Part shown: piece by piece, positions 22,236 to 52,647 of the stretch
Position numbering within the stretch: the first letter of the stretch is position 1
How the letters are laid out: each line of letters begins with the position of its first letter
Source of the DNA: Mytilus edulis
Lineage: Eukaryota
Direction: 5' to 3'
DNA: 64,000 bases
NCBI RefSeq assembly: GCF_963676685.1
Contig: NC_092350.1
Location: 57,040,001-57,104,000, forward strand
Position numbers and translations under genes: made by a program
The notes under the pieces: model-generated
What the model was told of the DNA's origin: nothing
Database searches by the model: none
The model's input: the letters and a program-made list of their open reading frames with translations, nothing else

Positions 22236-23430
22236 GAAAAATCTAAATAATAAATAATGTCCAATTTTTATTTAAATTCACGTTATTAACACATCAAACA
22301 CTAAAATGATGGTTACAATATCATCACAAACCTAACATACACGCCACAGGTAATCTCTTTTTCACTGCAAATTACATGTGTTAGTGGGATCCCAATTATC
22401 CCGTAACATGGGACAGTATTCTGACAGTGATGCATCAGTACACCAAAAGTAGGAACCAAACAAATCAGTTAACAAAAAGGTTCAACAATGGTTTTTACGG
22501 TTTACTTTAACAAATCGTGACTTGGATAGAGAGTTGTCTCATTGGCACACATACCACATCTTCTTATATCTATAAACTCATCAGATGGCTTCAAATAGAA
22601 ATACCTATAACTAAAAAACATAGAGTGGAATTGGCCAGGTATTTGTGGATCCCAAAAGCAAAAATACACTTAGCCCACCAATCGGTAAGGGAGTTTTTCG
22701 GTGTGTTGGAGAATTATTGAAGGCCTTTTGTTGGTGTTCTTTGAACTTGTTGATCACTCTCTGACGCACTCCCTGTTTTCATGCTATTTTTAATCAATAC
22801 AACCTTCAATCGGGAGTTCACCTTTGCATGCGATTGGTACAGGTGAAAAACTGCGATTCGTATCTTGATCAGACGCATTTTTTAAAGCACCGAAACATGT
22901 ATCGAAACCACTGTGAATAGAGTGCTCAATATTGAAATTATGGGTTTAATTCAAATATGTACCCGTTTGCCAAACTAATCAGATACATTTATACCAGTGA
23001 TGTGAACAACTCTGAACTCTTGATTACCCGCAAAAAGTAGTTATCATATCTATGCTCTTGTGTATTACAAAAAAATAAAGTAACAAAAATATCAAAATTT
23101 CAAAGACAATTTAAAACACAAACTTTCTATCCAAAGGGCAAAACGATGTGCCCAAGCACATCAAACGAGTGCATGGAAAACTAAAAACATACAAATGTCT
23201 TGGTAATGTAGAAAATGGTGGTTTAAATCGGGTTTATAGCTAAAAATGGCCTTGTATTAAAAAACTTTAGTTCGAAAGAAATGAAAATATTGGCATTCAC
23301 ATCACAAAAAATAAATTTCATTTTTTATTATTTGAAATCATGTTTAACAAATACTACTTTTTACGATTCAACATCTCTTGGATCTGTCTCATCAAGGTTG
23401 ATAGTACTTGTAAATGGTGGATAGACATAC

Positions 23431-24081
23431 TCATTTTCCGTATGATGCACGGATGCATTCTCCGTACTGGCAATCATAACCATTACAACAAGGATTATAG
23501 TCGCAAGATACTGTACTACAGCCTGATATACTTCTTTTTCCACGACTAAAACATAAAAAATGTAATAATGTATATTTGATGCATACCACATTGGCTTTCC
23601 TTAATCATTTTATTGGTGGGATTGTTGTTTATTCAGTGAAAACGAATAATATGTTGTACGATGAGATATTTCACAATTTATATGTAATGTTCTTAATTAC
23701 AAGTAGAAATTATTCATATAAAATTAACGATTTTTTAAAGCAGGTAAAAGCGTAATATATATATATACATATATACAACTCGTCTAAACATCAACCCAAC
23801 AATGTTAGATCTGTAAATTTGCTTTCGCAAATTTTTGGTTCTTCCCTCGCCGGGATTCGAACCCATGCTACTGTGATATCGTGACACCAAATCGCCTGCA
23901 CTGCAGCCGTCCCGCTAGACCACACGACCACCTGGGCTCTCAAAAAAGAGCTTTCGGTGGCCATATGTTACCTTTCCACGTCAGTTTTAATCTAGCGGCG
24001 TACTACAGTACATGATATATAAGGCATATATATATATATATCAGCGCCCTCGTGGGGAAAATCGTTGACTACTATACAGAC

Positions 24082-24122
<41 letters not shown>

Positions 24123-26895
24123 AAACCCCTGTGAATATAGCGCTCAATTGTGAAATTATGGGTTTAATTCAAAAATACCTAGCCGTTTACAAAACATCCT
24201 ATCAAGTGATGTGAACTTTTAATTAACTGCAAAAAGTAATTACCATATCTATGTTGTCGTATACACATGATATAATAAAAAAAGGAAAATCACAAAAAAA
24301 TCTAAATTCTAAAGAAAATTTAAAAATGGAAATTTCATATTCAATTTTAATAATGATGAGCTCAAACTAATCAAAGGAATGCATGAAAAACAAATATCAT
24401 GAACATGACTTAGTACATGCATTTATTAATGTAGAAAAATAGTGGTTTGAATCTGGCTTAAACATGCACCTTCATACTTTAGTTACAACAAGTTGAAAAC
24501 TATTGGCATTTACGATGAAAAAATAATTTCAATTCGTTTTTATTAGAAATCATGTTGAACAAATACTATTCAAATATTCAACATCTCCCAGATCAGTATC
24601 CTCAAGGTTGATAGTAAAAGTGCACTTGTAAATGGCTGATTTAAAAACTCACTTTCCGTATGATGCACGGATACATTCTCCGTACTGACAATCATAACCA
24701 TTACAGCAAGAATTATATTCGCAAGATACTGTACTACAGCCTGATATACTTCTTTTAACCATACTACAACATAAAGATTATAAACAAATACATTCTTTAA
24801 ACAACCTTCTTGAGGTTTTTTTATAATTGTTATTGTTGAGATCGCTTTTTATTGACCCATTTAGTGATCGTGGTTATTATGACGTACGATGATATATTTC
24901 ACTACTTCACCATCTCCAACTTTGTACTTTATTTGGACTGTAACATTTTGTTTTATTCGAGCGTCATTGATGAGTCTTTTGTAGACGAAATGCACGTCTG
25001 ACAGAAATATAAATTGTAATCCCGGTATCTATGATGACTTTATGTAATATTCTTAGTACCAAGAAGTAATTGCAATTTTTACTGTCTACCTTGTGCACCA
25101 ATACAATTGTAAGGGCGATATTATGTTAGATCAGTTCCCAAAGAAAGTGGTTTGGAACACTAATCTGAGAATCAGATAACTGATAATTTTAACCATTCAT
25201 ATCACATTTTCTTATATCTTTATACTTGTTTAGACTTTAAATTACGTAACACTTGTTTTACAAAACCTGGTTATTCAGTCGAATTAAGGTGGTACCTAAC
25301 ACTACAGGGAGATAACTCTGTAAAATCAGCTAAACGTTTTAATTACGTTGTGTTGATAAGGGAATATTAAGCTTCTCGATGATCAAAATTAGTGTTTGTC
25401 AAACTGCTATATAACCAGTGTAATTTTCCCGATAAAACGGTTGGTTCAAATTTTTAAAATTTTATATATTTTTGTCAAAGAGTCAAAGTAAATACTCTGT
25501 CAAAATTTTATGATAATTAAACGATCCAAATTAATTTTAGTGAAGGTGTTGGGTACCACCTTAAGTATTTTTTGTAGAGATATATTCATGTAAATTCACA
25601 TGTATGATGTGAAATGTCATCAAATTTGGTTTGTAGAATGATAATGACCGAACTCACCCGTAGTTATTGTCTCGAATACAGGTTTCATAAGAGCAAGTAT
25701 AACCATTACAGCACTGACGATAGACACAACTATCTCCATCATAACCACAGAGGTCAGGTGCTGCTCTTTTTACAAGACTAAATGAGACGTAATTAAATTT
25801 ATAGTAAATTAATTAATATAATACTATATTTGTCTTAATTGTTTTGATCAACAAATATTTGAGATTCGATGACCTTGTTGCAAAAGATATTTAAAAAACA
25901 TTACAAGTTTTATTTATAAAACCATTAATCCTGTTGACTGTTTTGTCATTCTAACATTCACAAATTGTCTAAACTTATATGCTGGGGTAGTATTCGTTTG
26001 AATGGAATCACAACATAATAAGAGGCAGTGTTGTATCAAATAATCTTGAAAGCTTATTGTGTTTTTTTGTAATATAACATGTTCACCCCTTATAAAAACA
26101 AAATGATAAATTATACTTTATAACAGTATATAAGACGTCAAAGACTTGAACAAATGGAAACTTGTATTCGATATTTCATATTTATAAATACAGTTATGAT
26201 TATCAAACCGAACAATCTAAACAATATTAAATAGTTATTTAAGACTCATAGTTAATAAACTTGAACTATTAAAAATAAAATGCAAATATACAACAATCAA
26301 CTTACTTTTTTATAAATCCATTGTATCCCAACGCTTCTCCATTAGACATACTAACTGTATGAAAAGAAAGTAAGCAATTCAACTGAGTATTTCAAAACCT
26401 AACTGATTGCATATGTTTGAAGAGCTGTATGATTAAAAAAATTACTAAAAAAATAATAAATCCATCTTAATAGGTATTTTTTTCTTGGGGTGAAAGTACA
26501 TTTTTTGTTTTATACATGTGATAAGAATTAACAAATATATTTTTAAAAATTAAATAGCAAAATCATGATATAAAAAAATTTAGTACCGACAAATTACAAC
26601 TGAGCTGATCATTTCCCAGTAACATCCGATTGACCATTTGCGCATGTTGCAATATGAATTAAGTGCTAAAAACCAAACAAAAACAATGTCATATTTTTTC
26701 ACCGACAGCGATGCTTAATTATTTAAGCAGCTAGTGATGAATGTGTATGTTTTTTGTAACTTAATGTGCAAATCATGACAAAAAATACAACACAAAATTA
26801 AGAGACAAAGTAAACGTAAATTGTGATCCTTATAAATTCTTACCTCCAACAAACACCAAAAACAGAGAACACACAACGCAAAGAGAAACCTGCAT
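23431..26895 (-). CDS. Multi-module CRP-I-like cysteine-rich peptide precursor (three C-C-CC-C-C modules, 148 aa; possible two-module 111-aa isoform)
   Basis: Exons 26895-26844, 26354-26306, 25777-25658, 24763-24653 and 23545-23431, all GT-AG and in frame. Translation: MQVSLCVVCSLFLVFVGVSMSNGEALGYNGFIKNLVKR|AAPDLCGYDGDSCVYRQCCNGYTCSYETCIRDNNYGMVKR|SISGCSTVSCEYNSCCNGYDCQYGECIRASYGNRGKR|SISGCSTVSCDYNPCCNGYDCQYGECIRASYGK*. Confidence 0.88.
23775..23940 (-). mobile_element. tRNA-derived SINE-like repeat embedded in (TA)n
   Basis: Minus strand shows box A-like TGGTCGTGTGG and box B GGTTCGAATCC, followed by a non-tRNA tail; three copies in the window. Confidence 0.75.
24086..24120. repeat. (TA)n microsatellite
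   Basis: Uninterrupted TA run of ~35 bp. Confidence 0.95.
25288..25560. mobile_element. MITE with TTAA TSD, Kolobok-like
   Basis: TTAA|GGTGGTACCTAACAC ... GTGTTGGGTACCACC|TTAA. Confidence 0.85.
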
Positions 26896-52434: not shown

Positions 52435-52647
52435 NNNNNNNNNNNNNNNNNNNNNNNNNNNNNNNNNNNNNNNNNNNNNNNNNNNNNNNNNNNNNNNNNN
52501 NNNNNNNNNNNNNNNNNNNNNNNNNNNNNNNNNNNNNNNNNNNNNNNNNNNNNNNNNNNNNNNNNNNNNNNNNNNNNNNNNNNNNNNNNNNNNNNNNNNN
52601 NNNNNNNNNNNNNNNNNNNNNNNNNNNNNNNNNNNNNNNNNNNNNNN
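52435..52647. other. Assembly gap (N run)
   Basis: 213 consecutive N. Confidence 0.99.

What the first reader, a model, noticed from the sequence alone, without database searches (positions are those of the whole stretch)
24649..24657. Stop codon doubling as a splice donor: a one-base switch between two- and three-module peptide precursors
Seen: the duplicated terminal exons end GGA AAG TGA GT (module 2) and GGA AAA TGA GT (module 3). In module 2 the G creates a consensus phase-2 donor AA|GTGAGT overlapping the stop, which splices in frame to the module-3 exon (..SYG-N-RGKR-SISGC..). If the donor is skipped, translation ends SYGK* and a duplicated 3'UTR with its own AATAAA (~24538-24544) follows. 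Inference: terminal-exon duplication plus a single A/G difference turned a last exon into an optional internal one. This would be a direct mechanism for adding modules to multi-domain CRP-I precursors, and could give 111-aa and 148-aa isoforms (or module 1 spliced straight to module 3).
Basis: partly seen in the sequence, partly recalled or inferred. Interest (0 to 1): 0.85.

Follow-up and report, generated by a model that had tools for sequence, protein, structure and literature searches.

The report
Duplicated knottin exons with stop-overlapping donors
A mussel defence-peptide gene (CRP-I group Q) carries three tandem copies of its last exon, and each stop codon but the last overlaps a good splice donor; chained splicing could therefore give one-, two- or three-peptide precursors, but only the two-peptide form has outside support and no RNA reads could be examined.

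Summary
On the minus strand, module 2 ends GGA AAG TGA GT (24657-24647) and module 3 ends GGA AAA TGA GT. AA|GTGAGT is a phase-2 donor that joins in frame to the module-3 exon (23545). A 1218-nt tandem duplication carries exon, 3'UTR and AATAAA.

- For: It uses the sister donor GG|GTGAGT that overlaps module 1's stop.
- For: module 3 is under purifying selection (dN/dS 0.11), so it is probably translated.
- Missing: nothing shows that the 24653 donor is used.
- Against: the proposed direction of change is wrong. The G is ancestral in four outgroup exon ends, and module 3's A is derived.
- Against: an in-frame stop is automatic for any phase-2 GTRAGT donor; exon 3's donor reads AAG TAA GT.
- Against: the mechanism does not explain known multi-array CRP-I genes, whose arrays sit in one exon 2-4 residues apart.

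The gene is the published sCRP-I Q1, catalogued as a 74-aa single-array precursor. The multi-exon reading is a new variant of a known kind.

The parts
26844..26895 (-). Exon 2: ATG plus 17 signal-peptide codons (MQVSLCVVCSLFLVFVG), then a phase-1 donor GAG|GTAAGA
   Evidence: It matches the published CRP-I gene plan (PMC4558851) and residues 1-17 of P0001.
26306..26354 (-). Exon 3: pro-region (VSMSNGEALGYNGFIK), with a phase-2 donor AAA|GTAAGT whose read-through is AAG TAA
25658..25777 (-). Module 1 exon (LVKR + AAPDLC...NNY-G), equal to the published sCRP-I Q1 mature peptide. Donor GG|GTGAGT at 25657-25652; in-frame TGA at 25656-25654 if unspliced.
25284..25564 (.). 281-bp MITE-like insertion with 19-nt terminal inverted repeats, 90 nt after the module-1 stop. 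No AATAAA or ATTAAA lies in the 90 nt between that stop and the insertion.
24653..24763 (-). Module 2 exon (MVKR + SISGCSTVSCEYNSCC...SYG). It has a phase-2 acceptor and a phase-2 donor.
   Evidence: It is 37/37 identical to residues 75-111 of P0001.
24647..24657 (-). The site of the finding: GGA AAG TGA GT. Donor GTGAGT is at 24652-24647 and overlaps stop TGA at 24651-24649.
24539..24544 (-). AATAAA 105 nt after the module-2 stop (duplicated 3'UTR)
23546..24652 (-). Putative 1107-nt intron between module 2 and module 3. It holds the module-2 3'UTR, an old dispersed repeat (24271-24461), (AT)n runs and a very young repeat (23820-23995).
23431..23545 (-). Module 3 exon (RGKR + SISGCSTVSCDYNPCC...SYGK + TGA at 23433-23431). 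It ends AAA TGA GTA, so there is no donor.
23324..23329 (-). AATAAA 102 nt after the module-3 stop, followed by a GU-rich stretch (TTTTTTGTGATGTG)
22897..24794 (-). Two tandem copies of the exon-4 unit in register, period 1218 nt (upstream edges are less clear)

Best explanation
This is the mussel sCRP-I group Q gene. Its CRP-I terminal exon has been tandemly duplicated twice: once long ago (module 1 versus modules 2/3) and once more recently (module 2 versus module 3, dS about 0.24). Each exon copy carries a phase-2 acceptor, a KR cleavage site, a six-cysteine knottin array, a Gly or Gly-Lys amidation signal and a TGA stop.

In this subfamily the exon ends ...G TGA G. That string is by itself a near-consensus phase-2 5' splice site (NN|GTGAGT). 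The donor-like G is older than the duplications. Any downstream copy of the exon can therefore be spliced on in frame at once.

Module 1 now behaves as an internal exon. It has a consensus donor, no nearby poly(A) signal, and a RefSeq model in M. trossulus that joins it to module 2. Module 2 is a composite internal/terminal exon. Transcripts either end at its own poly(A) site, giving the 111-aa two-knottin precursor, or use AA|GTGAGT to reach module 3, giving the 148-aa three-knottin precursor. Cleavage at KR would release separate anionic peptides that may be amidated.

Shown here: the sequence anatomy, the duplication, the ancestral G, purifying selection on modules 2 and 3, and the existence of the 111-aa model.
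Inferred: use of the 24653 donor, poly(A) choice, peptide processing and amidation.
For: - Gene anatomy and frames.
- Identity with published sCRP-I Q1 (70 of 74 residues, compared exon by exon).
- 111-aa M. trossulus RefSeq protein equal to exon 2 + exon 3 + module 1 + module 2, with module 2 37/37 identical to the window.
- Module 2 versus module 3 mature part: dN 0.026, dS 0.237, ratio 0.11, Fisher P = 0.014. dS equals the flank divergence (0.26), so the exon's similarity is not gene conversion.
- No poly(A) hexamer for 310 nt after module 1, but AATAAA 105 and 102 nt after modules 2 and 3.
- Module 2's donor AAA|GTGAGT differs from the obligatory exon-3 donor AAA|GTAAGT only at +3, and both bases fit the consensus R.
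- G before the stop in module 1, module 2, L003, L012 and L040 (S1).
- General knowledge: a strong U1-binding 5' splice site about 100 nt upstream of a poly(A) signal tends to suppress that site.
Against: - There is no RNA evidence for the 24653>23545 junction.
- The only database relative is the 111-aa form. No 148-aa or 74-aa protein was found among 5.8 billion clusters. Nothing holds module 3.
- The authors of the family catalogue list this gene as a 74-aa single-array precursor ending NNYG.
- If M. trossulus has module 3, its annotation did not join it.
- Retention of the donor and of AATAAA in module 2 is within neutral expectation (about 0.4 each at about 13% divergence per lineage).
- The evidence behind the RefSeq model could not be inspected.
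Confidence: 0.55

Rival explanations
1. Modules 2 and 3, and possibly module 1, are alternative last exons. An upstream phase-2 donor (module 1 at 25658, or exon 3 at 26306) splices to either acceptor. The products are module 1 + 2, module 1 + 3, or single-module precursors. The 24653 donor is not used, and the stop/donor overlap there is an inherited by-product.
For: - All acceptors and all three upstream donors are phase 2, so every combination is in frame.
- Module 2 keeps a complete terminal-exon outfit of stop and AATAAA.
- The M. trossulus model ends in module 2.
- The GTGAG string is ancestral also in single-exon-4 genes that have nothing downstream to splice to (L003, L040). Its presence therefore does not imply use.
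Against: - Module 2's donor is as good as exon 3's obligatory donor.
- Skipping an exon that has a good acceptor and a good donor would need active repression.
- There is no RNA evidence either way.
Confidence: 0.27
2. The gene is the single-array sCRP-I Q1 as published (74 aa, stop at 25656-25654). Modules 2 and 3 are untranscribed orphan copies of exon 4.
For: - The published catalogue lists Q1 as 74 aa ending NNYG and lacks the SISGC peptide.
- CRP-I clusters are rich in pseudogene fragments (PMC10138031).
- No database protein holds module 3.
Against: - The RefSeq 111-aa model includes module 2.
- Module 2 is 37/37 identical between the window and M. trossulus, while the rest of the precursor differs at 7 of 74 positions.
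- dN/dS is 0.11 with dS equal to flank divergence. If one copy were neutral, about 9 replacement changes would be expected where 2 are seen.
- All six cysteines, the KR sites and the open frames are intact in both modules.
- There is no poly(A) signal near the module-1 stop.
Confidence: 0.13
3. The duplication is an assembly artefact.
For: None beyond the general risk in repeat-rich mussel assemblies. A very young repeat and (AT)n runs lie between the copies.
Against: - The copies differ at about 26% of flank positions and at 11 of 111 exon positions. Assembly errors duplicate near-identical sequence.
- No second copy of the locus exists elsewhere in the assembly.
Confidence: 0.02

Closest known systems
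sCRP-I Q1 (formerly MgCRP-I 38) of Mytilus galloprovincialis (PMC10138031 supplementary tables; PMC4558851 table 2)
   Same: Signal exon, pro-region exon and module 1 match in 70 of 74 residues, compared exon by exon. The 17-aa signal exon with a phase-1 intron, the phase-2 intron before the KR site and the anionic mature peptide (pI about 4) are all shared.
   Different: Q1 is published as a 74-aa single-array precursor whose cysteine-rich exon is the last one. Here that exon ends in a consensus donor and is followed by two further in-frame knottin exons that are absent from the published catalogue.
XP_063399392.1, uncharacterized protein LOC134684029 of Mytilus trossulus (RefSeq model, P0001)
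   Same: It is exactly the two-module product (111 aa, ending SYGK). Module 2 is identical to the window's.
   Different: It differs at 7 positions in the pre-pro region and module 1. It has no third module.
mCRP-I (multi-MgCRP-I) precursors
   Same: Several knottin arrays follow one CRP-I pre-pro leader. They lie in the same chromosomal cluster (C7, 57.13-57.29 Mb in this assembly).
   Different: mCRP-I arrays all lie in one final exon, 2-4 residues apart, without dibasic linkers (papers). Here each array has its own exon, 17 residues separate Cys6 from the next Cys1, and each module starts with KR. This is a polyprotein rather than a pearl necklace.
Composite internal/terminal exons with competition between a 5' splice site and a poly(A) site (immunoglobulin mu secreted/membrane switch; intronic polyadenylation). 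From general knowledge.
   Same: A 5' splice site sits upstream of a functional-looking poly(A) signal in the same exon, so splicing or polyadenylation decides the C-terminus.
   Different: Here the downstream exon is a duplicate of the composite exon itself, and the donor overlaps the stop codon. Actual competition has not been shown.
Lepidopteran X-Tox and other multi-peptide AMP precursors (cited in PMC4558851)
   Same: Repeated cysteine-rich motifs are encoded by separate, duplicated exons.
   Different: The fold and the lineage are unrelated. The CRP-I authors used X-Tox explicitly as a contrast to CRP-I.

Membership tests
CRP-I family (sCRP-I group Q) | [quoted passage not shown] | tested here: met
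   26895-26844 holds ATG + 17 codons + 1 base, with donor GAG|GTAAGA
CRP-I family (sCRP-I group Q) | A pro-region exon followed by a phase-2 intron; the next exon starts with the last bases of the pro-region and a dibasic site | tested here: met
   Exon 3 is 26354-26306, which is 49 nt and shorter than the roughly 100 nt quoted. Its donor AAA|GTAAGT is phase 2, and module 1 starts (N)LVKR.
CRP-I family (sCRP-I group Q) | A C-C-CC-C-C array in the mature peptide | tested here: met
   All three modules have it
CRP-I family (sCRP-I group Q) | Sequence identity to the published Q1 precursor | tested here: met
   15/17, 16/17 and 39/40 identical for exon 2, exon 3 and module 1 against the Q1 entry in the supplementary table. 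The comparison was made exon by exon.
CRP-I family (sCRP-I group Q) | The cysteine-rich exon is the fourth and final exon | tested here: inconclusive
   A stop follows each module if it is unspliced. Modules 1 and 2 end in consensus donors, and a RefSeq model splices module 1 to module 2. No reads were available.
mCRP-I (multiple cysteine arrays) | All arrays lie within one final exon | tested here: not met
   The arrays are separated by 894 and 1107 nt of non-coding DNA with stops in frame
mCRP-I (multiple cysteine arrays) | Cys6 of one array lies 2-4 residues from Cys1 of the next | tested here: not met
   In the chained reading, 17 residues including a KR site separate the arrays. Neighbouring true mCRP-I genes show 2-3 residues.
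Composite internal/terminal exon (splice versus poly(A) choice) | A 5' splice site and a downstream poly(A) signal in the same exon unit, followed by a usable acceptor | tested here: met
   Donor at 24652-24647, AATAAA at 24544-24539, acceptor tttttatgttttag at 23546
Composite internal/terminal exon (splice versus poly(A) choice) | Both RNA outcomes are observed | not testable with these tools
Knottin fold | Cys1-4, 2-5, 3-6 cystine knot | not tested
   Predicted for CRP-I peptides in PMC10138031. It was not modelled here because it does not bear on the splicing question.

The most novel reading that the evidence does not exclude
The group Q locus is a true exon-chained polyprotein gene. Duplicated terminal exons have Lys/Gly-stop ends (..G TGA GT) that are ready-made phase-2 donors. 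A regulated choice between polyadenylation and splicing strings them into one-, two- or three-knottin precursors, and the released peptides include a knottin (SISGC...) that no CRP-I catalogue holds. This would show that exon duplication does add modules in the CRP-I family, a route that the field has called implausible. It would also show that an amidation-type C-terminus (Gly-Lys-stop encoded AAG TGA G) predisposes a last exon to become internal.
Probability: 0.45. Interest if true: 0.6.

Novelty: new variant of a known kind. Interest (0 to 1): 0.45.

Why it matters
[quoted passage not shown] They conclude that exon duplication cannot explain multi-module precursors. This locus is a concrete counter-example candidate.
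- A catalogued single-array gene (Q1) appears to be the head of a multi-exon precursor.
- At least one further knottin peptide, conserved and uncatalogued, follows it, and one independent annotation already joins the two.
- It also shows simply how a terminal exon becomes internal without any new mutation, because the stop context was already a donor and the acceptor phase matches.

The scope is narrow: one gene in a mussel-specific peptide family. The general phenomena involved (exon duplication, composite exons, in-frame stops in phase-2 donors) are well known.

Tried and rejected
The M. trossulus locus, where one would check for module 3 and the G/A state, could not be fetched.
- Two scans of metagenome contigs with degenerate patterns for module 1 and for modules 2/3 found nothing.
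- Protein databases: the profile-free search of 1.84 billion representatives gave only P0001 and P0002. P0002 is a 1617-aa WD40-like repeat protein and a spurious match. A search with P0001 over lengths 61-194 aa found only P0001 itself. A search with the module-3 open frame over 31-100 aa found nothing. A first try with 37 aa was below the size limit.
All comparisons were made exon by exon, so no search with the 148-aa model was made.
- Gene conversion as the cause of exon similarity is rejected, because dS equals flank divergence.
- Independent genes for modules 2 and 3 are rejected, because no signal or pro-region exon lies between the modules.
- A relic 3'UTR behind module 1 was sought. 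With the MITE removed, identity to the module 2/3 UTRs is only 46-49%, which is uninformative.
- No tRNA gene was found in the tRNA-like repeat.

Full report
**1. What is in the sequence**

The gene lies on the minus strand; the window is G000:C7:57040001-57104000. The exons were read directly.
- Exon 2 is 26895-26844. It holds ATG plus 17 codons (MQVSLCVVCSLFLVFVG) and a phase-1 donor GAG|GTAAGA.
- Exon 3 is 26354-26306, 49 nt (VSMSNGEALGYNGFIK), with a phase-2 donor AAA|GTAAGT.
- Module 1 is 25777-25658. It encodes (N)LVKR-AAPDLCGYDGDSCVYRQCCNGYTCSYETCIRDNNY-G and ends GG|GTGAGT.
- Module 2 is 24763-24653. It encodes MVKR-SISGCSTVSCEYNSCCNGYDCQYGECIRASYG and ends AA|GTGAGT.
- Module 3 is 23545-23431. 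It encodes RGKR-SISGCSTVSCDYNPCCNGYDCQYGECIRASYGK and ends AAA TGA GTA.

Read without splicing, module 1 ends NNYG-TGA and module 2 ends SYGK-TGA. Read with splicing, GG+T gives Gly and AA+T gives Asn, and the frame continues.

I did not build or search the joined models. All comparisons below are exon by exon.

**2. The duplication**

Modules 2 and 3 sit in two tandem units in register, with a period of 1218 nt.
- The exon differs at 11 of 111 positions and the flanks at about 26%.
- Both units keep AATAAA, 105 and 102 nt after the stop.
- They also share an old dispersed repeat further downstream.
- Module 1 is a much older copy. With the MITE removed, its downstream sequence is only 46-49% identical to the others.
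- No signal or pro-region exon lies between the modules. Modules 2 and 3 are therefore not separate genes.
- The divergence of the copies rules out an assembly artefact.

**3. What the gene is**

The supplementary table of PMC10138031 lists sCRP-I Q1, formerly MgCRP-I 38 (genome and transcript evidence in PMC4558851). It is given as a 74-aa precursor that ends NNYG.

The window matches Q1 in 15/17, 16/17 and 39/40 residues for exon 2, exon 3 and module 1. Group Q is the only anionic sCRP-I group, with pI below 4. Here all three modules have pI about 4.1.

The SISGC... peptide of modules 2 and 3 does not occur in that catalogue.

**4. Outside support for chaining**

A search of 1.84 billion representative proteins with module 2 found one real relative, P0001. 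This is XP_063399392.1, an uncharacterized protein of Mytilus trossulus, 111 aa.
- It equals exon 2 + exon 3 + module 1 + module 2, joined exactly at GG|GT, and it ends SYGK.
- Module 2 is 37/37 identical to the window, while the other 74 residues differ at 7 positions.
- From general knowledge, RefSeq keeps Gnomon models only when they have at least partial evidence. The intron is therefore probably backed by RNA-seq, but I could not inspect this.
- Also, no AATAAA or ATTAAA lies within 310 nt after the module-1 stop. A 281-bp MITE sits 90 nt after it.

I therefore take the module 1 to module 2 splice as likely real (about 0.85). The published 74-aa model is then probably incomplete.

**5. 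Is module 3 used?**

For the mature part of modules 2 and 3:

| Measure | Value |
|---|---|
| dN | 0.026 |
| dS | 0.237 |
| dN/dS | 0.11 |
| Fisher P | 0.014 |

- dS equals the flank divergence, so the excess similarity of the exon is confined to replacement sites and is not gene conversion. The exon shows 6 differences in 99 nt, with P = 3.5e-7 against the flank rate.
- If one copy were drifting, about nine replacement changes would be expected; two are seen.
- All cysteines and the KR site are intact.

Module 3 is therefore probably translated, and so it must be spliced to an upstream donor. Three phase-2 donors could serve: 24653, 25658 or 26306.

On sequence alone, the module-2 donor (AAA|GTGAGT) differs from the obligatory exon-3 donor (AAA|GTAAGT) only at +3, and both bases fit the consensus. 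The module-3 acceptor has the best pyrimidine tract of the three.

Against this, no 148-aa protein, and no protein with module 3 at all, is in the databases. The M. trossulus annotation stops at module 2. I put use of the 24653 donor at about one in two.

**6.

(a) Direction of the change.
- The base before the stop is G in module 1 (GGG TGA GT), module 2 (AAG TGA GT), L003 (AAG TGA GA), L012 (AAG TAA GC) and L040 (AAG TGA GC).
- L040 is the S1 gene, 13 kb before the window.
- Only module 3 has A. The G, and with it the donor-like string, is ancestral. The last copy lost it through a synonymous G-to-A change.
- No mutation was needed to make the exon internal; the duplication itself was enough.

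(b) The stop/donor overlap is not special.
- Any phase-2 donor of the form GTRAGT has TRA in frame. All three phase-2 donors of this gene do, including exon 3's AAG TAA GT.
- Frame compatibility is also automatic, because every copy inherits the family's phase-2 acceptor.

(c) Generality.
- Published mCRP-I genes, and at least fourteen neighbouring loci in this assembly, carry two to four arrays in a single open exon.
- Their spacers are 2-3 residues long, with no KR linkers, relic stops or relic UTRs.
- Their stops are TAA/TAG/TGA in unrelated contexts.
- The second CRP-I gene in the window ends CAT TGA GAC.
- The mechanism thus applies to this locus only, not to the known multi-array genes.

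**7. Most likely mechanism**

- The terminal exon was duplicated in tandem.
- Its stop context already served as a 5' splice site.
- Module 1 became obligatorily internal once it had no poly(A) site nearby.
- Module 2 is a composite exon, where a strong donor 105 nt upstream of AATAAA competes with polyadenylation.
- KR cleavage would then release two or three anionic knottins with Gly or Gly-Lys/Arg amidation signals.

Processing and amidation are inferred from the motifs only.

**8. Limits**

- Two metagenome scans were empty.
- The scan's own notes added only first-reader notes for this window and for the neighbouring cluster.

**Verdict**

It is a new variant of a known kind, of moderate interest. 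One RNA-seq mapping would decide it.

Noticed in passing
window 23820-23995: A tRNA-like element with box-A/box-B-like motifs, though ARAGORN calls no tRNA. It sits in the module 2-3 intron and is 99-100% identical to many copies genome-wide (at least 789 candidates). Some copies stand in tandem arrays with a period of about 440 nt. It is therefore a very recent insertion and possibly polymorphic. (AT)n runs flank it.
   Followed up: partly
window 25284-25564: A 281-bp MITE-like element with 19-nt terminal inverted repeats (TTAAGGTGGTACC...). It lies 90 nt after the module-1 stop, about where modules 2 and 3 have their poly(A) signal.
   Followed up: partly
window 24271-24461 (and the matching part of the module-3 unit): An old dispersed repeat, 72-75% identical to more than 300 places on all chromosomes. 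It lies inside the duplicated unit, so it was present before the module 2/3 duplication.
   Followed up: no
L003 (G000:C7:56857036-56860137), minus strand, just after the exon-4 stop: The paralogue ending RSSYGK-TGA carries three tandem copies of a roughly 29-nt unit (CGTTCCAGTTACGGGAAGTGAG...). The codons for the C-terminus plus the stop are repeated twice more in the 3'UTR.
   Followed up: no
G000:C7:57027181-57027297 (L040), 13 kb before the window: An exon 4 identical in its mature peptide to the published sCRP-I S1 (SVGCIGRSC...TYGYGK). It ends AAG TGA GC. The Q gene is thus flanked by S-type and multi-array CRP-I genes in one large cluster (C7, 56.84-57.29 Mb).
   Followed up: partly
window 9919-6582, minus strand: A second CRP-I gene: signal exon MKVSFFLIVSLLLMFVG and exon 4 LVKRSPKCGRRLCPCCLGYTCVSGRCHAH-TGA. 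It has a compressed C-x-CC spacing, and its stop context is TGA GAC with no donor.
   Followed up: partly
window 52435-52647: A run of 213 N (gap or masked). It was left untouched.
   Followed up: no
module 2 versus module 3 poly(A) regions, window 24500-24544 and 23285-23329: The GU-rich stretch after the module-3 AATAAA (TTTTTTGTGATGTG) reads TTTTTTCATCGTAA after module 2. The poly(A) site of module 2 may therefore be the weaker one.
   Followed up: no
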